64,000 nt of DNA from Octopus sinensis (GCF_006345805.1 NC_043020.1:5952001-6016000), one strand, 5' to 3'. Shown: positions 261 through 62,575, counted from the first letter of the stretch. A program made the numbers and translations. Notes: generated by a model from the letters alone, not told the origin.

Positions 261-440
261 TCTCTTTTACTTGTTTCAGTCATTTGACTGCGGCCATGCT
301 GGAGCACTGCCTTTAGTCGAGCAAATTAACCCCGGGACTTATTCTATCGGTCTCTTTTGCCAAACCGCTAAGTGACGGGGACATAAACACACCAGCATCG
401 GTTGCCAAGCAATGCTAGGGGGACAAATACAGACACACAA

Positions 441-481
<41 letters not shown>

Positions 482-657
482 TACATATATACGACGGGCT
501 TCTTTCAGTTTCCGTCTACCAAATCCACTCACAAGGCATTGGTCGGCCCGAGGCTATAGTAGAAGACACTTGCCCAAGGTGCCATGCAGTGGGACTGATC
601 CCAGAACCATGTGGTTGGTAAGCAAGCTTCTTACCACACAGCCACTCCTGCGCCTCC
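261..657 (-). mobile_element. tRNA-derived SINE family A (CORE-like CCTTGGGCAAG, central (TA)n(TG)n)
   Basis: Head ggcgcaggagtggctgtgtgg...gttcagtccc, tail ...gaaacaagtaaaagag. Many partial copies occur across the window. Confidence 0.8.
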
Positions 658-1485
658 AAGTATTTTTTCCAATACCCTGACAATCCTGCCTATGGTGTTG
701 TAAATGTTACCCTTTCCTTGCAAAAAAATCCAACAAAAAAACAGTATGATCTTAGTTCATAATGTTGTCCTGGTGAGGCAGGGTCAGTTGTCAATGTTTT
801 TTGATTGAAAGTTTGTGAGTGTTTGCTTGTGGTTGACCTCAGGCTAACCGAATATTGTGTGTGAACAGAAAATGGAACGTGTTTGTCAACTTTGATTTAT
901 GGGTGAGCACAGCTGGCTTCTTTTTTTGTTTGTTTTGTCTTTGCACTTTGGAATGGAAACAATGTGAAAGAGAACAATAGCCAGGAAAGTGGCTTCTATG
1001 TGGTCACTTGAATTGCTAGAAATAGTAGTGACCCCCTCTCCTTCAAATTACATCGTGCCATCCTGAAAAGTGAAGGACTTGCATTTGGCTAGCATAGGTT
1101 TAGTCTTAGACATGAAATGTCTGAGAAAAGAACTGGATAATAATGACTGGGATGTTTTTGATTGTTGATCTGCCCAGATGGAGCTGACCTGAGGTTTGTC
1201 CAGGTTGATAATTTATTAACCCTTTTGATGCCAACCCACCTGAGGTTACCCCTGGTTCTAAGGTAGCAATTCCAGGTTTAAAAAATTTTTTTATTAAAAC
1301 CTTATATCAAAATTTCATATTAATTAATATTCCAAACACTAATTTAGTAAAAAGCGCCTCTGAGGTGCCACGTAAAAGCGCCTGTGCGACATCATGTGAA
1401 AGCGTCCATGCAGTGCCATGGTAAAAGTGCCCATGCAGGGTCATGTAAAAGTACCCATGTGATGCCACATAAAAGCACCCATATA

Positions 1486-5220: not shown

Positions 5221-5574
5221 GCGAATTAATTTTGAGAATAACGAAGAATTAGTAAAACAAACTTTTATCATGAAAATGTCGTGATTATCAAATTACAGAG
5301 TTAAGGATACAGACGTCAGTAAAACACTTTTGTCATTATTTAGCTTGTACATGAGATATAAATTAGGATGGAATTTTGATGAATGATTTTAATTTAGGTC
5401 ACTTTAAACCAGGAAGTTTGTATGATAGAACCAAAGGCTGTCTCAAGTGGGTTGCTATGAAGAGGGTAAATATAGTCAGATTAGTATGGCAGAAGATTAA
5501 GTTCCCACATATCCATCAGTTGGTTGGCTGGTATTTTGGAAAGCCAGCCAACCGTCTCTTTTTCCATAAATGCG

Positions 5575-6030
5575 TGGGTTTATTGTCTTCCCAATAGCAA
5601 CATATGGATGCGAGACCTGGATACTAAAGAAAGCTGACCAGAAGAGAATTAATGCATTCGAGCTTTGGTGTTGGAGAAGACTTTTACGGATTCCATGGAC
5701 AGCGAGGCTCACCAATGGAGAAGTTCTTAAGCAGATCAGGCCGAAAATGTCGCTAGAAGCTAGGATCACCAAGCATAGATTGGCATATTTCGGTCATATT
5801 ATGCGGAGAAAATCCCTGGAGAAGGACATCATGCTCGGAATGGTCAGTGGCAAGAGAGGAAGAGGCCGACCAAGAACCCGCTGGCTTGACACCATCAGGA
5901 GTGATACCGGAATGGACATAGCCAATCTGAAAGAAGCGGCCCAGGATAGAACTGACTAGAGGACACTGATCCAACGAGTGACCGAGAGTCGACTTCGACT
6001 GAGCGGATAGAGAGAGAGAGAGAGAGAGAG
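5575..6030 (+). mobile_element. 5'-truncated RTE (BovB-like) LINE 3' end with (AG)n tail
   Basis: YGCETWILKKADQKRINAFELWCWRRLLRIPWTAR...FGHIMRR..LEKDIMLG.V.GKR.RGRPRTRWLD, ending VTESRLRLSG* followed by (AG)n. Confidence 0.9.
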
Positions 6031-12777: not shown

Positions 12778-15700
12778 CACACACATACACATATTCATAC
12801 ACATATATGTACACATGCTAATCTACTTAGTTAAGAAGCCATGTTTAGACAAGTTCTAATGACTTTCACACACACACACACACACACACACGATCACATG
12901 TTCACACACCAAGAAACATACGCTCCCATAACATTACACTGACATACACACACTCCTAATTCTCCTACAGAGAAACATTCAATGGGTACACACGTGCACA
13001 CACATACACGTGCACACACAAATAAAAATGCACGTTCTTTGTGATCTTTGTTTCTCTACAATTCTCCCCTCTTGTGTCCCGTTTTATTAACCACATTTTC
13101 TAACCCCTCCCCTCACACTGCCATGTGCTTCACATTTCACCAAATCTATCTAAACCATGAAGCTAGGGGTGGGAAATTAGTGCAAGTGGGCCTCTACCCC
13201 AGCAGTAATACCCACATAACAGTATGATTAGTGTGGGTTGGTTCCCTGTAAAAAGGTCCGGTGCCGATGCCATGTACGAAGCACTGGCGCCAGTGTCATG
13301 TAAAATGTGTTGGTGCCACATAAACGATACATGTGCTAATGTCACATAAAATGCACCCATGATAGTGCCACGTAAAAAGCAGTGGCACCGGTGCCATGTA
13401 AAAGGCACAGATGCTGGTATCATGTAAAAAGTATCCGTGCTGGTGCCACATAAAAAGCACCCAGCACCCTCTGTAAAGTTGCCGGCATTTGGAAGGGCAT
13501 CCAGCTGTAGAGACCCTGTCAAAGCAGAGACACCCGGAACCTGGTGCAGCTCTCCAACCTTGCCAAACCCTGTCAAACTGTCCAACCCATACCAGCATGG
13601 AAAACAGACATTCGATGATGATGATGATGGCCAATATTCAGTAATTCCTAATTTTTAATTACCAATTTCTTTATTGCCCACAAGGGGCTAACCATAGAGG
13701 GGACAAAGAAGTACAAGCAAACATATTAAGTTGATTACATTGACCCCAGTGCGCATCACTGGTACTTAATTTATTGACCCCGAAAGGATGAAAGGTAAAG
13801 TCTACCTCAGCGGAATTTGAACTCAGAACGCAGCAGCAGATGAAATACCACAAAGCATTTCGCTCGGCGTGCTAACGTTTCTGCCAGCTTGCCGCCTTCT
13901 AAATTTTTAATTACCATTTAACCAAGGGTGGAAGTGGAAGTGATATGACCTCTTCAGGACTTCCTCCCACATTAATGATGTAGGTAATATCCACCCTGAA
14001 TGTATCTGAAAGATAATGTCTTCAAAGAAGAGGGTGGATGAAGAGACACCAGGGAGACTGGTCTAAATGTATACAACTTTGCTAACGGTACCCCAGGGAC
14101 CAGGTGTTGGTGTTAAACTGGACGCTGTGTTAGGTTGACCAGCCAAGGATCAGATGATGGTGTTAAATTGGACCCTGTGTTAGGTCAACCAGCCCAAGAC
14201 CAGGTGGTGGGTGCTGGACTGGGCAGTATGTTATATTGACCACCCATGGACCATGTAGTGGTGTTATCTCCTCCTTCTCATTCAGAGCTAGATGTAACTG
14301 CCACTAGGTCGTTGTTTACCTTCTCTCAGATCAAAGATAATTTTAATAAATCAAGGACCAGGTGATGCTGTTAAACAGGACATTGTTTGGTTTATTAGTA
14401 CTAGTACTAGTAGTAGTAGTAGTAGTAGTTGAGACAAGGGAAGAGTTCAGCATGTTTGGTTGGCCAGTGGTTTGACTACAGTATATTCTTGTTAAAGAGA
14501 GGTTAATATTAAGAGAGGGACAATTGTCTTTTGGTATAGTTTACAATGATTGTGTGTGTATGTGTGTATGTATGTATGGAGCAATTCTGTGACCCAGATA
14601 TTTGGTGCAGGGTTCTCGTATTGTGCTTAGCGGCTGCATGGTTACAGTACAATGATTGAAACCAGTAAAATGTAAAAGATAAAGATATGTCTAAGTCTTG
14701 TGTCTTGCTAAAATTGCTGTGCTGATGACACCTATAGAGGCAGAAACACACATCCCTAGCTGTCACCTTGTCTCCAGAAATTAAACAGGCTGTCATTTCC
14801 TTAACAGCAAGTTAATTCCAGGAAACTTGATTTTTTGATGTTATCTCCTCCTTCTCATTCAGAGCTAGATGTAACTGCCACTAGGTTGTTGTTTACCTTC
14901 TTTCAATCCAAAGATAATTTTAATAAATCAAGCATTTATCTGGTAGGGTTATGAATATACCTCTCCTTCCCCCTATTTTATCATCCAAATTTAAACCACT
15001 GACCACTTTGAGTTATTTCCCTTAGATTGTTTTGATTACCTGTCTAGGTGCTGACATGGCTGTGTGGTAAGAAGCTTGCTTCCTAATCACATGGTTTCAG
15101 GTTCAGTCCCACTGTGCAGTACCTTGGGCAAGTTTCTTCTATTATAGTGCCAGGACTGACCAATATCTTGTCAGTGAAACTGGGAGACAGAAACTGTGTG
15201 GAGTTCCATCATGTGTGTGTGTGTGTGTACATGTGTCTATGTCTGCACGTGCATGTGTGTACATGTGCAAGTGTATGTGTGTGAGCATGTGTATGTGTGT
15301 GTGCATATGTGTGTGAGGATGTGTGTGTGTGTATGTGTATGTCTGTTTGTTCCCCCACCACCACTTGACAACCGGTGTTGGTGTATTTGCATCCAAGTAA
15401 CTTAGCAGTTCAACAAAAGAGATCGAGTACCCTAGAAATATAAAAAAAATAAGTACTGGGCTCAATTTGTTCGAATACATGTTTCAAGGTGGTGCTCCAG
15501 CTTGGCCACAGTCCAAGATAGATATCCACATCTTTTACATTTTACAAGTTTCAATCATGCACCTTTACCCTTTAAAGGTATAGATCCCTTCTCAAGTCAT
15601 GCCGATTGATAAGGGCCGGTTTTCCCCATTTCCATGGCGTATATATTCCCCACCTGGATAGGATGCCAGTCCTTCGCAGGGTTACTCACTTTTGCCAGCT

Positions 15701-16364
15701 GAGTGGACTGGAGCAACGTGAAATGAAGAGTTTTGCTCAAGAACACAATGCATTGCCCACTACAGGAATCGAAACCACAATCTTAAGATCATGAGTCCAA
15801 CACCCTAACCACTAAGCCATGTGCCTCCACCTGTGTGCGCTCTTGGTGGAATTGGCACAGGTGCCTTTTACGTGGCATTGGTACAGGTGATTCTTATGTG
15901 GTGCCAGCACAGGTGCTCTGTATGTGACACTGGCATCAGTGCCTTTTATGTGGAATTGGCATGGGTACCTACTATGTGGAAAGGGCATGGGTGGTGCTTA
16001 TGTGATGCCAGCATGGGTGCTTAGTACATAGCGTCGGCACAGGTCCTTTTTACGTGGGACCAGTACCCATTGGTTCACCGAGTGCTTGCAAGCCAAAGAC
16101 ATTTCAGCCGAGAGAGGGAAAGGAACGGAGAGAAGTGGCTGTGTGCCAGGCAGGGGATTCGTTGGTGTATGATAGAGGGCCGGGGATATGGATATCCATC
16201 TTACTACCGAGGGGGTGGAGATACTTGGCTACCCCTGTACAACAAGGAAGCGGAAGGAAGCGAGAGAAAGACAGACCAAAAAATATTTTTTTAGCCTTTT
16301 ATTCGTTTCAGCCATGCTGGAGCATGTCTAATTTATTAAATAAATTTGATATACCACTGTAGTA

Positions 16365-16526
16365 GGCGCAGGAGTGGCTGTGTGGTAAGTAGCTTGTTTA
16401 CCAACCACATGGTTTCAGGTTCAGTCCCACTGCGTGGCATCTTGGGCAAGTATCTTCTGCTATAGCCTTGGGCCGACCAAAGCCTTGTGAATGGATTTGG
16501 TAGACGGAAACTGAAAGAAGCCCGCC

Positions 16527-16578
<52 letters not shown>

Positions 16579-16795
16579 ATGTTTGTGTGTCTGTGTTTGT
16601 CCCTCTAGCATCGCTTGACAACCATGCTGGTGTGTTTACGTCCCCGTTACTCTATAGTGGTTCGGCAAAAAGAGACCGATAGAATAAGAACGGGGCTTAC
16701 AAAGAATAAGTTCCGGGGTCAATTTGATTCGACTGAAAAGGCGGTGCTCCAGCATGGCCGCAGTCAAATGACTGAAACAAGTAAAAGATAAAAGA
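16365..16795 (+). mobile_element. SINE family A
   Basis: Full-length match to the other copies. Confidence 0.8.
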
Positions 16796-54776: not shown

Positions 54777-54971
54777 TTACTGGAAGTGAGCAACCTTATT
54801 GTTGATGGGAAGTTTCACATATTCCTTAGACTGATGATAAGCTTTGATCTTCGGAAGTTCTTCAAATCTTTTCAGGAAAGCGTTTAGTTTTGGATAATTC
54901 TCAAGAAGCTTGCAGTCAAATGCCTTATGTTGATCCAGGAGTTCATACATTGGGAAGTCTACAAAAGTCAC
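54777..54971 (-). CDS. GSTM: GST mu, last coding exon
   Basis: attccag| acceptor. Translates VTFVDFPMYELLDQHKAFDCKLLENYPKLNAFLKRFEELPKIKAYHQSKEYVKLPINNKVAHFQ*, a mu-class C-terminus. Confidence 0.95.
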   Translation of the reverse strand: MTFVDFPMYELLDQHKAFDCKLLENYPKLNAFLKRFEELPKIKAYHQSKEYVKLPINNKVAHFQ

Positions 54972-55056
54972 CTGGAATATTCACAGGGAAAAAAAATAAA
55001 ATTTAATTCTTTTAATGCATAATGAAGAAAATGTGGGTTTTCTCATACACATTTTA

Positions 55057-55106
<50 letters not shown>

Positions 55107-55110
<4 letters not shown>

Positions 55111-55338
55111 CATATATTATATATGAGGGAATATTATTCCAAACTTACAGGGAAAAATTCAATTTAGAAATACTAAATCAAATTTCACAAAATATAATAT
55201 ATATATATATATAAATATTAGAAAAAAACCACCTTTTATCAATTCAAAATGAATAATTAAATTATACCATTTAGAAAAATTACATATAGAAAGATTAAAT
55301 ATTGAATTAATAAAAGGTGTTTTTTTTTCTAATTTATA

Positions 55339-55374
<36 letters not shown>

Positions 55375-55810
55375 GGGAAGATTCTGTCAAGAAACACGTG
55401 TTGTCTTTAAAATGGAAAGTATGGGATTCTGAATAGATATAGTAAGTATCGTATTTAATGGCTCGATCGGGTATAATACCTTTCAATGTTGATTGAGGTG
55501 AGGGTGGCTCTATCTCAAAAACTACTTATATATATATATATAAATATTAGAAAAAAAACACCTTTTATCAATTCAAAATTAATAATTAAATTACACCATC
55601 TAGAAAATTACATATAATAGAAAAGTTAAAATTGAAATAACAATCAAAAAGTAAAGATTAAGTAAATTACAAAAATAATATAATGTATATAATAGGTAGA
55701 AAACGACACGCGTTTCGCTGCTATATTTAAGAAATGATTATAGTAGTAGAGAAATCATTTGCATATAAATAGTCGCTCATCAGGTTAAAAATATAATAGA
55801 ACAATTAATA
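55107..55810. mobile_element. Probable Penelope-like element remnant (AT-rich, partial direct repeat, hammerhead)
   Basis: About 85 bp at 55211-55295 is repeated at about 55540-55625 next to the hammerhead motif. PLE pseudo-LTRs typically carry both features. Confidence 0.45.
55702..55786 (-). ncRNA. Type-I hammerhead ribozyme motif with canonical core and long stem II, in the last GST-mu intron (sense)
   Basis: aac CUGAUGA gc...gc GAAAC GCGU GUC guu. All core nucleotides and the GUC triplet are present, with an inner 8-bp helix aaaugauu/aaucauuu. Stem I is only 3 bp. Confidence 0.65.
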
Positions 55811-55897
55811 AATATACTTTAATATATTTATATATATATAAATTCTTTTTTCTTGTAAGTTTGGATTTTATTCCCTCAAATAATAATTATATATATA

Positions 55898-55950
<53 letters not shown>

Positions 55951-56076
55951 ATATAATATATATATATATAAATATAATCAATCCAAACATGAACAAGCAA
56001 GAAAAAACAGCAACGCAAGGACGTGGAATAAGTACAGTGTTATTGGACGCTCAGGAAAGGGAAGAAAAGAAAGAGG

Positions 56077-56112
56077 ATTTCATGTTTCGAGCCGGAGCTC
56101 TTCATCAGAAAT
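56077..56112 (-). ncRNA. Minimal hammerhead-like motif with G at position 17
   Basis: auuu CUGAUGA A GAGC-uccg-GCUC GAAA CA U G aaau. Confidence 0.55.
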
Positions 56113-56575
56113 ATAGAAAAAGTCCAAAGAAGGGAAGATGGAGAAAGAAGATTGCCAACGATACACACGTGGTCACATATTGAAATGACCGGAAGGGAAT
56201 GGGTGAAGAAAAAGTTCTTTCAAAGACAGGAGAGTGCAAGAGAAGGAGGTATGTGTGGGTATGTGCGTGTGCTCAGGTCTGTGTGTGTGTGTAATGATAG
56301 CCCGTGTATGTGCATGTGTGTATGTGGTTGTGGCTGTTTATGTATGTGTGTTGGACTTAGTGTTGTTTAAGGTCATAGGAAGAATTTATAGTAAGAGTTT
56401 TGGTAGGAGTGTCTGTCTCTTGTGTGTCTACCTACACATGTGCATAGGAGAATGGTCAGTAGAAAGGTGTTTAACTAGTAGTTTGTGTGTGTACGTGTAT
56501 GTATATGTAGTGTGGTGTGTGTGTATGTATATGTGTACATGTGGGTACGTGTGTACACATGAGGTTGTGTCTAGA

Positions 56576-56634
<59 letters not shown>

Positions 56635-56640
56635 TTATAC

Positions 56641-56677
<37 letters not shown>

Positions 56678-57069
56678 CATATATATACACATGTGGAGGC
56701 GCAATGGCCCAGTGGTTAGGGCAGTGGACTCGTGGTTGTAGGATCGCGGTTTCGATTTCCAGACTGGGCGTTGTGAGTGTTTATTGAGCGAAAGCACCTA
56801 TAGCTCCACGAGGCTCCAGCAGGTGGTGATGGCGACCCCTGCTGTATTCTTTCACCACAACTTTCTCTCACTCTTTCTTCTGTTTGCCTGCTCGCTTAGC
56901 CAGCGGGGTGGCGTCATTTGAAGGCTAAAACAATGCGAACGCATTGTGACCAGCGATGTGTAGCAACATATGATAGCCTGGTCAGTCAAAAAAATATATA
57001 TATATATATACACACATACAAACATATATGTATATATATACACGTAAAAGCACCAAGCACATTACGTGG

Positions 57070-57875
57070 CACGTAAAAGCACCATCCGTTCGTGTTCGTT
57101 GCCAGCCTCGCCTGGCCCCGTGCCGGTGACACGTAAAAGCACCGTCCGTTCGTGGCCGTTTGCCAGCGGCATGTAAAAGCACCATCCGTCCGTGTCCGTT
57201 GCCAGCCTCGGCTGGCCCCCGTGCCGGTGACACGTAAAAGCACCGTCCATTCGTGGCCGTTTGCCAGCTCTGTCTGGCCCCGTGTCGGTGGCACATAAAA
57301 GCACCATCCGTTCGTGTCCGTTGCCAGCCTCGGCTGGCGCCCGTGCCGGTGACACGTAAAAGCACCGTCCGTTCGTGGCCGTTTGCCAGCGGCACGTAAA
57401 AGCACCATCCGTCCGTGTCCGTTGCCAGCCTCGGCTGGCCCCCGTGCCGGTGACACGTAAAAGCACCGTCCATTCGTGGCCGTTTGCCAGCTCTGTCTGG
57501 CCCCGTGTCGGTGGCACATAAAAGCACCATCCGTTCGTGTCCGTTGCCAGCCTCGGCTGGTGCCCGTGCCGGTGACACGTAAAAGCACCGTCCGTTCGTG
57601 GCCGTTTGCCAGCGGCACGTAAAAGCACCATCCGTTCGTGTTCGTTGCCAGCCTCGGCTGGTCCCCGTGCCGGTGACACATAAAAGCACCGTCCGTTCGT
57701 GGCCGTTTGCCAGCTCTGTCTGGCCCCATGTCGGTGGCACGTAAAAGCACCATCTGTTCGTGTCCGTTGCCAGCATCACCTGGCCCCGTGCCGGTGACAC
57801 GTAAAAGCACCATCTGTTCGTGGCCGTTCGCCAGCTCTGTCTGGCACCTGTGCAGGTGGCACATAAAAAACACCC
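57070..57875. repeat. GC-rich minisatellite with a 223-bp higher-order period, inside a family D repeat
   Basis: aaaagcacc recurs at spacings of 60,40,61,61,61,40,61,61,61,40,61,61,60. It is contiguous with the family D body at 57875-58045. Other family D copies lie at about 3490, 13250, 26293, 36710 and 63160. Confidence 0.9.
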
Positions 57876-58324
57876 ACTACACTTGCGGAGTGGTTGGCGT
57901 TAGGAAGGGCATCCAGCCGTAGAAACACTGCCAGATCTGACTGGGCCTGACGAAGCCTTCCAGCTTCACAGACCCCAGTTGACCCGTCCAACCCATGCTA
58001 GCATGGAAAGCGGACGCTAAATGATGATGATGATGATGATGATACAGACACACACGCACACACACACACATATACACAGACGTGCAGGAAGTAAATAGAC
58101 ATCTTTAATTTTCAAAATTTCTGATCTAAGCGTCTTAATATGAATTTAGATTAAACCTCTAACACTTACTGTGCACAGTTACTGCAAAAATAAATAATCA
58201 TATGACTGAAATCTCAAAACTAATCAGTTACTGCATAATTAATTAAAAACAGTGTTAATAAATAAGCATTATATTTGACTAAGTAATCTGAAAGCTAAAG
58301 GATTAATCAAAAGGATTAACTCAC

Positions 58325-58420
58325 CTTTTCACCACCAAACCAAGTATGTTTGCCCAAATATTTCTCAAAGTCTTGCAGTGATGTATGGACACTCTTCAGG
58401 TATTCTGGTTTATTTTTATC
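58325..58420 (-). CDS. GSTM: GST mu, exon equivalent to vertebrate exon 6 (96 bp)
   Basis: ctacag| ... |gtgagt. Translates DKNKPEYLKSVHTSLQDFEKYLGKHTWFGGEK. Confidence 0.95.
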
Positions 58421-58629
58421 CTGTAGATTAGAATACAGAACAAGGTAAAACGCTATAATTAAGGGGAAAATAACAAAGTTTATTTGAGTAATTGGTTTGG
58501 TCACTTATTACATGAATTGAAAGATTGCTTTGGTAAAAATAACTTTCAGTTTAGACATTAACAACCCTCCCATCTCCCTCAAATATTACTCCCACTTACT
58601 CATCTACGAGTGCTTTTTATTACCCTCAA

Positions 58630-59780: not shown

Positions 59781-60448
59781 GTATAAGGTGTGCTGAGGGT
59801 TGGTACAGAAACAGGACAAAAACAAAAGGGGCCACAACTATCCAACATTCTGCCTAACAACCTCAGGTTTTTACCTGAAGTTCCAGCTGAACCCACATTG
59901 CGACAGGAGGCACAAAGAGGAGCAGCTCTGCCCAACCCCCTACTTTACCAGAAATTGTACAAAAGAGAAACCCAAACATACTGAAAGGTGGCAACCCAGC
60001 CTGGACTTAGCCTCAAAAGATGTGTGTATGTGTGTGGTAAGAAGCTTGCTTACAAACCACATGGTTCCAAGTTCAGTCCCACTGTGTGGCACCTTGGGCA
60101 AGTTTCTTCTTCTATAGCTTCGGGCCTTGTGAGTGGATTTGGTAGATGGAAACTGAAAGAAGCCTGTTGTATGTATGTATGTATGTGTGTGTATGTCTTT
60201 ATGTCTGTATTTATCCTTCACCACTGATTGACAACCAGTGATGTTGTGTTTATGTCCCTGTAACTTAGTGGTTCAGCAAAAGACATCGATAGAATAAGTA
60301 ACAGGCTTTAAAACAAAAAAAAAACAAAAATAAAACAAGAGTATTGGTGTCGATTTGTTTGACTAAAATTACTTCAAGGCAGTGCTCCAGCATGGCTGCA
60401 GTCTAATGACTGAATCAAGTAAAGAGATAAAAACATAATATATATATA

Positions 60449-60930
60449 GGCGCAGGAGTGGCTGTGTGGTAAGTAGCTTGTTTACCAACCACATGGTGCC
60501 GGGTTCAGTCCCACTTGTGAGTGGATTTAGTAGACAGAAACTGAAAGAAGCCCGTCGTATATACGTATATATATATAACGGGAAGCTTTATGAAAATAAA
60601 CAAAAGACGAAGGCAGGTGGAATACAAACAAACAATTGCTTTAGTATGGCACTCAGGAATATAATAAATAAAACAAGTCTTTTACGTTTCGAGCCTACGC
60701 TCTTCAACAGAAAGATACACGTATGTGTGTGTTTGTGTGTCTGTGCTTGTCCCTCTAGCATTGCTTGACAACCGATGCTGGTGTGTTTAGGTCCCCGTCA
60801 CTTAGCGGTTCGGCAAAAGAGACCGATAGAATAAGTACTGGGCTAACAAAGAATAAGTCCCAGGGTCGAGTTGCTCGATTAAAGGCGGTGCTCCAGCATG
60901 GCCGCAGTCAAAGTGACTGAAACAAGTCAA
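60449..60930 (+). mobile_element. SINE family A with an internal deletion and a Penelope-like fragment (about 60575-60720) in its microsatellite
   Basis: Head and tail intact, and the centre is interrupted by the segment carrying the 60678-60715 hammerhead motif. Confidence 0.75.
60678..60715 (-). ncRNA. Minimal hammerhead-like motif with an A6U variant
   Basis: ucuuu CUGUUGA A GAGC-guag-GCUC GAAA CG U A aaaga. Stem I has 5 bp, stem II 4 bp, an ACGU palindrome and a GUA triplet. Confidence 0.55.
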
Positions 60931-61916: not shown

Positions 61917-62206
61917 AATGTGTATATATACACAGACGCACACACATATACATACACACACATAAATATACATACATGCATGCATGCTTACATACAGAGA
62001 TACATCCATACATATATGTATATAGAGTGCATAGCTCAGATATCAAAGAGACTCTCCAGGTTAGGCCACTACTTCCCAATGGAGAGTTTCTCTATAACAG
62101 ACGTGTTGTCATAATGTTGCATGAAGGAATCACAAGATGGATTCTTGAAGCTGAGCCAACAGACAGGAGACTGAGGGGTAGATCCAGACGAAATAGTTAG
62201 AGAATA

Positions 62207-62575
62207 GGCGCAGGAGTGGCTGTGTGGTAAGTAGCTTGCTAACCAACCACATGCGTGGTATCTTGGGCAAGTGTCTTCTGCTATAGCCCCGGGCCGACCA
62301 ATGCCTTGTGAGTGGATTTGGTAGACGGAAACTGAAAGAAGCCTGTCGTATATATGTATATATATATATATATGTGTGTATGTGTGTGTGTTTGTCCCCC
62401 TAGCATTGCTTGACAAACGATGCTGGTGTGTTTACGTCCCCGTCACTTAGCAGTTCGGCAAAAGAGACGGATAGAATAAGTACTGGGCTTACAAAGAATA
62501 AGTCCCGGAGTCGATTTGCTCGACTAAAGGCGGTGCTCCAGCATGGCCGCAGTCATGTAAAAGAGTAAAAAGAGT
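62207..62575 (+). mobile_element. SINE family A
   Basis: Match to the family with a short internal deletion. Confidence 0.75.

What the first reader, a model, noticed from the sequence alone, without database searches (positions are those of the whole stretch)
55702..55786. Canonical-core hammerhead in the sense strand of the last GST-mu intron
Seen: on the GST-mu sense strand, aac CUGAUGA gc [long stem II with an 8-bp inner helix] gc GAAAC GCGU GUC guu. Every core position, the G10.1-C11.1 pair and a GUC triplet are present, and stem III resembles the schistosome GAAAC-GCGC-GUC. The predicted cut lies between 55705 and 55704, about 730 nt before the 3' splice site. Established: intronic hammerheads occur in animal pre-mRNAs. 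Inference: if active it would cut the GST pre-mRNA during transcription. Stem I is only 3 bp, so activity may be weak or need dimerisation.
Basis: partly seen in the sequence, partly recalled or inferred. Interest (0 to 1): 0.7.

Follow-up and report, generated by a model that had tools for sequence, protein, structure and literature searches.

The report
Hammerhead-like motif in a transposon insertion
A complete hammerhead-ribozyme core really is written in the last intron of an octopus GST-mu gene, but it sits in a young AT-rich mobile-element insertion, folds poorly and has no partner copy. It is most likely an inactive transposon-borne relic, not a ribozyme that cuts the GST message.

Summary
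The letters are as described. On the - strand, 55786..55702 reads aac-CUGAUGA-gc[58 nt]gc-GAAAC-gcgu-GUC-guu, with C17 at 55705. It lies in the sense strand of the last GST-mu intron (about 58318..54972), 733 nt before the last exon.

Evidence for a working ribozyme is weak:
- Rfam Hammerhead_1 scores 11.4 bits against a threshold of 34.
- Helix I is 3 bp (+1.0 kcal/mol) and helix III is 2 bp.
- There is no loop-loop contact and no second copy in 64 kb.
- The hammerhead-compatible fold is 8.35 kcal/mol above the ensemble. A Schistosoma-type benchmark is 3.9 kcal/mol above.

The motif lies in a ~760-nt, 19% GC element with ~45-nt inverted ends, inserted in a (TA)n microsatellite. Octopus vulgaris has the same insertion (94.5% identity), with all three differences inside helix II. 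The Argonauta intron (960 nt) lacks it. O. bimaculoides has an assembly gap there.

A descriptor loose enough to accept the motif hits 0.07 times per window by chance, and a strict one 0.0014 times. That is rare locally but expected dozens of times in a genome of this size.

The same introns hold Penelope-type minimal-hammerhead relics abutting (TA)n.

Best reading: an inactive hammerhead relative carried by a mobile element. Active cleavage: about 8%.

The parts
55702..55786 (-). Hammerhead-like motif (type I topology): AAC / CUGAUGA / helix II / GAAA / helix III / C17 / GUU. The predicted cut is between 55705 and 55704.
   Evidence: Read directly. Rfam Hammerhead_1 local match 55785..55703, 11.4 bits, E 5.6. 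It is the only hit of my descriptor in the window.
55777..55783 (-). Core C3-A9 (CUGAUGA)
55717..55776 (-). Oversized AU-rich helix II (60 nt). It has 2 closing G-C/C-G pairs, a 2x2 internal loop, 4 bp, a 6x6 loop, 1+8 bp and a 13-nt loop.
   Evidence: Constrained fold. In O. vulgaris a TA insertion makes a 9-bp run.
55705..55716 (-). G12 A13 A14, then helix III (A15.1-U16.1, C15.2-G16.2, loop GCGU), then C17. ACGCGUGU is one transition away from the palindrome ACGCGCGU.
55125..55880 (-). AT-rich (19% GC) mobile-element-like insertion that carries the motif. Its ends are ~45-nt inverted repeats (55125-55172 and 55880-55835).
   Evidence: Composition. Inverted ends. Present as a block in O. vulgaris, L006 29970-30736, 94% identity. 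A related 3' part is in O. bimaculoides, L007 12540-12760.
55071..55124 (.). (TA)n flank on the 3' side of the element
55888..55976 (.). (TA)n flank on the 5' side of the element. It also abuts the 3' end of the Penelope-like relic at 56115-55977.
55527..55643 (-). Internal direct repeat, copy 1 (no hammerhead in it)
   Evidence: 89% identity to copy 2, 329-nt spacing
55198..55313 (-). Internal direct repeat, copy 2
54777..54971 (-). Last GST-mu exon (VTFVDF...AHFQ*), preceded by AG at 54973-54972
   Evidence: It encodes the same amino acids as O. vulgaris L006 30870-31061.
58319..58444 (-). Penultimate GST-mu exon, which defines the 5' end of the last intron

Best explanation
The motif is a hammerhead relative carried by a mobile element, not a host ribozyme.

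A ~760-nt, 19% GC element with inverted ends inserted into a (TA)n microsatellite of the last GST-mu intron. This happened in the lineage leading to the Octopus vulgaris group. The element brought (or chance produced in it) a type I hammerhead core with the short, near-palindromic helix III typical of invertebrate retroelement hammerheads.

As it stands the RNA should not cleave at a useful rate:
- Helix I is 3 weak pairs and helix III is 2 pairs.
- Helix II is a 60-nt AU-rich hairpin with internal loops next to the core.
- There is no loop 1 to contact loop 2.
- The 3' flank GUUUUC pairs better with GAAAC than with the helix I strand AAC.
- No second copy is nearby to build the dimeric helix III that such hammerheads need.

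The expected consequence for GST-mu pre-mRNA is none or negligible. The intron is spliced as usual.

Shown: the letters, the context, the insertion, the sub-threshold model score, the energetics and the presence in O. vulgaris.
Inferred: the retroelement origin and the inactivity.
For: Motif and location:
- Core, G10.1-C11.1 and GUC are present.
- The 3' half differs from the Rfam type I consensus CGAAACGcgCGUC at one position.

Chance expectation:
- The strict descriptor is expected only 0.0014 times per window, and about 10 times less in 19% GC sequence. This favours a non-random origin.

Mobile-element context:
- The motif lies inside a block with ~45-nt inverted ends, flanked by (TA)n on both sides.
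- The block is at the orthologous site in O. vulgaris.
- It is absent from the 960-nt Argonauta hians intron.
- Related 3'-end fragments occur elsewhere in O. bimaculoides.
- Three paralogous Penelope-type minimal-hammerhead relics lie in the same gene. Those at window 56108 and L006 29112 end on (TA)n, and that pair is head-to-head in O. vulgaris.

Literature fit:
- Penelope-like elements show a (TA)n insertion bias and inverted 5'-truncated copies (PMC8557442).
- Metazoan type I hammerheads have a 1-2 bp helix III with a small palindromic loop and are inactive as single motifs (PMC4209133).
- Cephalopod genomes carry real type I hammerheads: 235 Rfam hits in the giant squid (PMC6962438).

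Inactivity:
- Rfam 11.4 against 34 bits.
- Helix I duplex +1.0 kcal/mol.
- Hammerhead-compatible ensemble +8.35 kcal/mol (P about 1e-6), against +3.9 for a Schistosoma-type benchmark.
- Only one copy in 64 kb.
Against: - No second full copy of the hammerhead-bearing segment (55834-55644) was found. So family-level conservation or covariation is untested.
- The only paralogous fragment found lacks that segment.
- A 58-nt helix II is far outside what is described for metazoan or Penelope hammerheads (4-8 bp).
- No RT or GIY-YIG coding remnant lies next to it.
- The inverted ends with TA-rich flanks would also fit a DNA-transposon MITE, which has no reason to carry a hammerhead.
- Nearest-neighbour energies ignore tertiary contacts and protein help, so inactivity is inferred, not shown.
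Confidence: 0.55

Rival explanations
1. Pure coincidence. The two core halves and the short complementary flanks arose by chance in AT-rich intronic DNA. The sequence never was a ribozyme.
For: - The bare pattern is at chance level (1 seen against 0.40 expected).
- The loose descriptor hits 0.074 times per window and the strict one 0.0014. That is thousands and tens of chance hits per 2-3 Gb genome (inference).
- A metagenome scan for both halves returned two plainly fortuitous hits in GC-rich bacterial DNA.
- The MFE z-score is -0.63.
- Rfam is far below threshold.
- Helix I is the minimum my descriptor allows.
- Helix II length is what a uniform chance spacing would give.
- The paralogous fragment lacks the motif.
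Against: - The strict form is about 10 times rarer still in 19% GC sequence (1 in 6903 x 128 kb).
- The 13-nt 3' half matches the type I consensus at 12 of 13 positions, and helix III is one transition from a perfect palindrome.
- The setting is a mobile element in a (TA)n target next to Penelope-type hammerhead relics.
Confidence: 0.3
2. Active cis-cleaving intronic hammerhead. The nascent GST-mu pre-mRNA is cut after 55705 before the last intron is spliced, lowering mRNA output.
For: - Intact core, G10.1-C11.1, GUC, sense strand, 733 nt ahead of the 3' splice site.
- Core and helices I and III are unchanged in O. vulgaris, while helix II took three changes, one of them A-U to G.U.
- Intronic self-cleaving ribozymes that compete kinetically with downstream exon synthesis are known (CPEB3 ribozyme, PMC10919898).
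Against: - Hammerhead fold probability is about 1e-6, roughly 1000 times worse than a weak-helix-III benchmark.
- Helix I is +1.0 kcal/mol.
- There is no loop 1/loop 2 contact.
- Single Penelope-type motifs gave no detectable cleavage in vitro (PMC4209133).
- With 733 nt to the exon, polymerase needs only about 10-45 s (inference from usual elongation rates). The rate would have to be above 1 per min.
- The two species are 94.5% identical overall, so zero changes in 27 core and stem nucleotides carries no information.
- The element is absent from the Argonauta intron.
Confidence: 0.08
3. A dimer-dependent hammerhead of a retrozyme-like or Penelope-dependent non-autonomous element. It cleaves only when two copies meet, as in tandem genomic copies elsewhere or multimeric transcripts. 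It serves the element's own RNA processing. The intronic copy is a silent solo.
For: - The helix III self-duplex ACGCGUGU is -9.5 kcal/mol.
- Low GC and a ~329-nt internal periodicity recall non-LTR retrozymes, which have ~300-bp monomers and GC below 45% (PMC7229834).
- The (TA)n target and an inverted 3'-end fragment at the 5' border fit Penelope-style integration.
Against: - The 329-nt repeat covers only ~117 nt and does not include a second hammerhead.
- The cofold minimum of two copies pairs GAAAC with GUUUU across molecules. That buries the core instead of forming a hammerhead dimer.
- No other copy was available to test.
Confidence: 0.07

Closest known systems
Canonical metazoan type I hammerheads (Schistosoma Sm-alpha, newt satellite 2, Rfam RF00163)
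   Same: Type I topology, a full CUGAUGA...GAAA core, G10.1-C11.1 and a GUC site. Helix III has 2 bp with a 4-nt loop, and its sequence CGAAACGCGUGUC differs at one position from the family consensus.
   Different: Helix II is 60 nt instead of about 4 bp plus a loop. Helix I is 3 bp instead of about 6 bp with an internal loop. There are no loop-loop contact nucleotides. It scores 11.4 bits against the 34-bit threshold. It is a single copy, not in tandem repeats.
Penelope-like-element hammerheads, including min-HHRs (Cervera and de la Pena 2014, PMC4209133)
   Same: Short helix I, a larger-than-usual helix II, a weak near-palindromic helix III that implies dimer dependence, and a retroelement-rich (TA)n setting. 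By analogy it is expected to be inactive as a monomer.
   Different: There is no unpaired nucleotide between A9 and G10.1, no adjacent RT/GIY-YIG ORF or recognisable pLTR, and no second copy within 64 kb. Helix II is many times longer. The neighbouring relics at 56108 and 60710 fit this family much better than the candidate does.
Non-LTR retrozymes of invertebrates (Cervera and de la Pena 2020, PMC7229834)
   Same: Low GC, a repeat period near 330 nt, and a type I hammerhead with a 2-bp helix III plus tetraloop.
   Different: Only one hammerhead is present. The internal repeat is partial and lacks it. The inverted ends are not a retrozyme feature.
Conserved intronic hammerheads of amniotes (HH9/HH10, Rfam RF02275/RF02277)
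   Same: Sense-strand location in an intron of a protein-coding gene.
   Different: HH9 and HH10 are ultraconserved across amniotes (from my knowledge) and have curated Rfam models. This one is a young insertion, seen only in the O. vulgaris group, and matches neither model.

Membership tests
Hammerhead ribozyme, type I (Rfam RF00163) | All conserved core nucleotides (C3 U4 G5 A6 N7 G8 A9, G12 A13 A14, A15.1-U16.1, H17) | tested here: met
   Read directly and aligned by the covariance model.
Hammerhead ribozyme, type I (Rfam RF00163) | Score at or above the family's gathering threshold (34 bits) | tested here: not met
   No hit at gathering. None at E<=10 in 901 nt. 11.4 bits, E 5.6 in a 111-nt search.
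Hammerhead ribozyme, type I (Rfam RF00163) | Three helices that hold the core, with the hammerhead fold thermodynamically accessible | tested here: inconclusive
   All three helices can be drawn, but helix I is 3 bp (+1.0 kcal/mol) and helix III is 2 bp. The hammerhead-compatible ensemble is 8.35 kcal/mol above the full ensemble, against 3.9 for a Schistosoma-type benchmark.
Hammerhead ribozyme, type I (Rfam RF00163) | Helix I / helix II loop-loop tertiary contact needed for activity at physiological Mg2+ | tested here: not met
   There is no loop or bulge in the 3-bp helix I. The helix II loop lies more than 20 bp-equivalents from the core.
Hammerhead ribozyme, type I (Rfam RF00163) | Site-specific self-cleavage 3' of position 17 | not testable with these tools
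   Needs in vitro transcription or RNA end mapping.
Penelope-like-element hammerhead / min-HHR | Lies in the pseudo-LTR of an element encoding RT (+/- GIY-YIG) | tested here: not met
   No RT or GIY-YIG Pfam hit in the three - strand frames of about 55970-58318. No long ORF of that kind appears in the ORF list. The + strand frames were not scanned.
Penelope-like-element hammerhead / min-HHR | Unpaired nucleotide between A9 and G10.1 | tested here: not met
   The candidate reads CUGAUGA-GC. The relics at 56108 and 60710 and at L006 29112 do have the extra A.
Penelope-like-element hammerhead / min-HHR | G10.1-C11.1 pair, and palindromic 15.2-16.2 / loop 3 | tested here: inconclusive
   G10.1-C11.1 is present. 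ACGCGUGU is not a perfect palindrome, but it self-pairs with two G.U wobbles (-9.5 against -13.3 kcal/mol for ACGCGCGU).
Penelope-like-element hammerhead / min-HHR | A second copy in tandem or nearby (<50 kb) so that a dimer can form | tested here: not met
   A single match of the 20-nt 3' half at up to 3 mismatches and a single descriptor hit in 64 kb. The putative degenerate copy at about 55472-55385 is not significant.
Penelope-like-element hammerhead / min-HHR | Many genomic copies forming consensus families with covariation | not testable with these tools
   No octopus genome can be searched by DNA here. Only the O. vulgaris ortholog was obtained.
Non-LTR retrozyme | Tandem repeats of about 170-400 bp, each with a type I hammerhead | tested here: not met
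   Only a ~117-nt direct repeat at 329-nt spacing, without a second hammerhead.
Non-LTR retrozyme | Low GC content (<45%) | tested here: met
   19% GC.
Conserved intronic hammerheads (HH9/HH10 type) | Retained at the orthologous intron across distant species | tested here: not met
   Present in O. vulgaris. Absent from the gap-free 960-nt Argonauta hians intron. O. bimaculoides is unresolved because of a 1.07-kb assembly gap.

The most novel reading that the evidence does not exclude
A hammerhead with an unprecedented 58-60-nt AU-rich helix II and a 3-bp helix I is nevertheless catalytically competent. It might be helped by proteins or by co-transcriptional folding before the competing GAAACG/CGUUUU hairpin forms. 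It would then have been co-opted in the Octopus vulgaris species group to throttle GST-mu expression by cutting the last intron before splicing.
Probability: 0.06. Interest if true: 0.6.

Novelty: new member of a known kind. Interest (0 to 1): 0.22.

Why it matters
If the motif were active, it would be a rare invertebrate case of a transposon-delivered ribozyme placed to cut a detoxification-gene pre-mRNA. It would also stretch the known limits of hammerhead architecture. The evidence points the other way. It illustrates how hammerhead cores spread with (TA)n-targeting retroelements into octopus introns and decay there. It also shows that a perfect core alone does not predict activity. The more solid by-product is a small family of Penelope-type minimal-hammerhead relics in the same gene. 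It documents past activity of hammerhead-bearing elements in the Octopus lineage.

Tried and rejected
1. Rfam at gathering thresholds on the whole window gave nothing. Lenient scans gave a sub-threshold Hammerhead_1 match only when the search was cut to 111 nt.

2. Orthologs through the last exon alone gave only unnamed fragments at <=61% identity. Their contigs (L001-L003) share no intron similarity. A longer four-exon query then worked.

3. A metagenome scan for both core halves gave two chance hits in GC-rich bacterial DNA.

4. A second, degenerate hammerhead one repeat period downstream (about 55472-55385: ACCCGAUCGAGC...GACAACACGUGUUUC):
- The local alignment score equals the shuffle mean.
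- The two-piece score ranks at 0.125% of all positions, so p is about 0.05 for the expected place.
- Rejected as unsupported.

5. The middle of the element (55375-55530) as a copy of the window's abundant SINE:
- One weak nhmmer hit to L007 8132-8501 (E 3e-4).
- No BLAST hit anywhere else.
- Left open.

6. Other CTGATGA...GAAAC matches at 14722-14747 (+) and 49630-49598 (-) fail my hammerhead descriptor. Taken as chance.

7. tRNA-like origin: none found.

8. Sequence strings of helix III in the literature turned up only unrelated primers. Supplementary consensus files of the Penelope paper are not held.

9. A dimer between the candidate and the relic 325 nt upstream: their helix III strands (ACGCGUGU and ACAU) are not complementary (read directly).

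Full report
**Observation**

- C3 is at 55783 and G12 at 55716.
- C17 is at 55705, so the predicted scissile bond lies between 55705 and 55704.
- The 58-nt insert contains a perfect 8-bp helix AAAUGAUU/AAUCAUUU.

Rfam's type I hammerhead model aligns the site as CUGAUGAG*[58]*CGAAACGCGUGUC against its consensus CUGAcGAG*[12]*CGAAACGcgCGUC. The claimed likeness of helix III to the schistosome type is therefore real.

**Gene context**

tblastn with a mu-class GST places exons on the - strand at 63090-63001, 61087-60995, 58444-58319 and 54971-54777.
- The last exon follows an AG at 54973-54972.
- The concatenated exons match mu-class GST structures best (3gtu_B, E 9e-56).
- They are 96% identical to 'glutathione S-transferase Mu 3-like [Octopus vulgaris]'.

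So the motif lies in the sense strand of the last intron (about 3.35 kb), 733 nt before the last exon.

**Is it more than chance?**

The evidence is mixed.
- The bare spacing pattern is at chance level: 1 seen against 0.40 expected.
- My descriptor is just permissive enough to accept the candidate. It finds only this site in the window.
- In first-order Markov simulations it hits 0.074 times per 64-kb window. The strict form (CUGAUGA, G10.1, C17) hits 0.0014 times.
- With the local 19% GC composition the strict form occurred once in 6903 x 128 kb.

The motif is thus unusual for one window, and more so for its AT-rich setting. A 2-3 Gb genome is still expected to hold tens of strict chance hits (inference). 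A scan of metagenome contigs for both halves duly returned two obviously fortuitous bacterial matches.

**What the motif sits in**

Positions 55001-56000 are 19% GC. The block 55125-55880 has these features:
- ~45-nt inverted ends reading TGAGGGAATA..CCAAACTTACA..
- (TA)n on both sides, at 55071-55124 and 55888-55976
- an internal ~117-nt direct repeat with 329-nt spacing

It therefore looks like a mobile-element insertion into a (TA)n microsatellite.

A related copy of its 3' ~220 nt, also ending on TA-rich sequence, lies elsewhere in the O. bimaculoides GST locus (L007 12540-12760). That copy lacks the hammerhead-bearing part. It looks 5'-truncated, which fits a retroelement better than a cut-and-paste MITE (inference).

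No RT or GIY-YIG remnant is detectable in the - strand frames of the intron.

**Comparative evidence**

| Species (locus) | Last intron | Element and motif |
|---|---|---|
| Window | 3347 nt | present |
| O. vulgaris (L006, OX597837.1) | 2237 nt | present; window 55892-54000 aligns at 94.5% identity |
| O. bimaculoides (L007) | 2489 nt, including a 1.07-kb run of N | not seen in the sequenced part; unresolved |
| Argonauta hians (L008) | 960 nt, no gap | absent; no descriptor hit, no similarity to the element |

In O. vulgaris the core, helix I and helix III are identical to the window. The three differences all fall in helix II: a TA insertion, a G-to-A change, and an A-to-G change that turns A-U into G.U. 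At this divergence, zero changes in 27 nucleotides is expected anyway. The comparison says nothing about selection.

The feature is therefore a lineage-specific insertion, unlike the deeply conserved intronic hammerheads of amniotes.

**Can it work?**

- Rfam gives no hit at gathering thresholds. It gives none at E<=10 in 901 nt, and 11.4 bits against a 34-bit threshold in the smallest search.
- Helix I (AAC/GUU) has a duplex energy of +1.0 kcal/mol.
- Helix III is two pairs.
- Helix II has only two pairs before a 2x2 internal loop.
- There is no loop 1 to contact loop 2.

| Sequence | Hammerhead-compatible ensemble above the full ensemble | P |
|---|---|---|
| Window candidate | 8.35 kcal/mol | about 1e-6 |
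| O. vulgaris version | 7.2 kcal/mol | 8e-6 |

The main competitors are GAGCGAC/GUCGUUU and a GAAACG/CGUUUU hairpin, which bury G12-A14 and the cleavage site.

Two copies could form an 8-bp helix III (-9.5 kcal/mol). However, the cofold minimum extends that duplex through GAAAC/GUUUU and does not form a hammerhead dimer. No second copy exists in the window in any case.

The literature on this class agrees:
- Metazoan type I hammerheads with a 1-2 bp helix III cleave only as dimers.
- Single Penelope-type motifs showed no detectable cleavage (PMC4209133).
- Non-LTR retrozymes are reported to be depleted from introns in vertebrates (bioRxiv 10.64898/2026.07.22.740005).

With 733 nt to the exon, polymerase would reach the 3' splice site in roughly 10-45 s (inference from usual elongation rates). 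A ribozyme would need a rate above 1 per min to interfere. The CPEB3 ribozyme illustrates the principle (PMC10919898).

**Context that raises the 'real lineage' reading**

The same gene carries relics of a different, Penelope-type minimal hammerhead:

| Copy | Sequence |
|---|---|
| Window 56108..56084 | CUGAUGA-a-GAGC-uccg-GCUC-GAAAC-AU-G |
| Window 60710..60686 | CUGUUGA-a-GAGC-guag-GCUC-GAAAC-GU-A |
| O. vulgaris L006 29112..29089 | CCGACGA-a-GAGU-ucc-GCUC-GAAAC-GU-U |

- The O. vulgaris copy is inverted and lies head-to-head with the ortholog of the first copy. These two 3' ends abut (TA)n.
- Their consensus has every hallmark listed for Penelope min-HHRs: an extra nucleotide after A9, G10.1-C11.1, and a palindromic CG at 15.2-16.2.
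- The helix I pair 2.4-1.4 appears as A-U, G.U, C-G and G-C in the four sequences. With n = 4 this is not significant (76 of 500 shuffles).
- A (TA)n target bias and inverted 5'-truncated copies are described for Penelope-like elements (PMC8557442).
- The giant squid genome has 235 Rfam-grade type I hammerheads (PMC6962438).

Hammerhead-bearing retroelements have therefore been active in cephalopods and at this very microsatellite.

**Verdict**

| Reading | Confidence |
|---|---|
| Inactive hammerhead relative delivered by a mobile element | about 0.55 |
| Pure chance | about 0.30 |
| Active cis-cleaving ribozyme that affects GST-mu | about 0.08 |
| Dimer-dependent element ribozyme of which this is a silent solo | about 0.07 |

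The find is at most a new, atypical member of a known kind. Its interest is low unless cleavage is shown.

Noticed in passing
window 56115-56078 (-), 60717-60680 (-); L006 29614-29638 (+) and 29112-29089 (-): A small repeat family carries a Penelope-type minimal hammerhead relic (consensus CUGAUGA-A-GAGC-NNNN-GCUC-GAAAC-GU-H). Each copy has one or two inactivating changes. Both window copies are sense to the GST gene. In O. vulgaris two copies lie head-to-head, each ending on (TA)n. Helix I pair 2.4-1.4 is A-U, G.U, C-G or G-C in the four sequences.
   Followed up: partly
window 55125-55880: A 19% GC element with ~45-nt inverted ends, (TA)n on both flanks and an internal ~117-nt direct repeat at 329-nt spacing. 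A related, apparently 5'-truncated 3' part lies at L007 12540-12760 (O. bimaculoides). The class is unresolved: MITE or Penelope-mobilised non-autonomous element.
   Followed up: partly
window 57066-57835: A GC-rich (59%) tandem array with a 223-nt period, 3.5 copies, 95% matches, built from 61/101-nt subunits, inside the same intron. Window 58058-56556 (1.5 kb, with this array and a SINE-like piece) corresponds to only ~270 nt in O. vulgaris (L006 28914-29186). There, that stretch is the inverted hammerhead-relic copy.
   Followed up: partly
window as a whole, compared with L006: The window is 94-95% identical in intron DNA to O. vulgaris OX597837.1 (37.29-37.33 Mb). The two exons compared encode identical amino acids. 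So it comes from a very close relative of, or a divergent haplotype of, the O. vulgaris group.
   Followed up: partly
L007 23046-24129: A 1.07-kb run of N in the O. bimaculoides assembly, bordered on its upstream side by TA/TG microsatellite, sits exactly where the orthologous insertion would be. So presence or absence there cannot be called.
   Followed up: no
window 402-680, 1307-1726, 16336-16611, 59940-60224, 62069-62416 and others: Many copies of one SINE-like repeat, seen as recurring pseudo-ORFs (..[35 protein letters not shown]..), each next to TA/CA microsatellites.
   Followed up: no
window 5570-5959 (+): A 129-aa ORF (..CETWILKK....RIPWTARLTNGEVL..GRGRPRTRWLD..) that looks like the C-terminal part of a LINE reverse transcriptase. 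This is recognised from memory and was not scanned.
   Followed up: no
window 14722-14747 (+), 49630-49598 (-): Two further CTGATGA...GAAAC spacings, making 3 seen against 0.27 expected for gaps of 4-34. Neither has a credible helix II or a UH site, so they are taken as chance. The third is the relic at 56108.
   Followed up: yes
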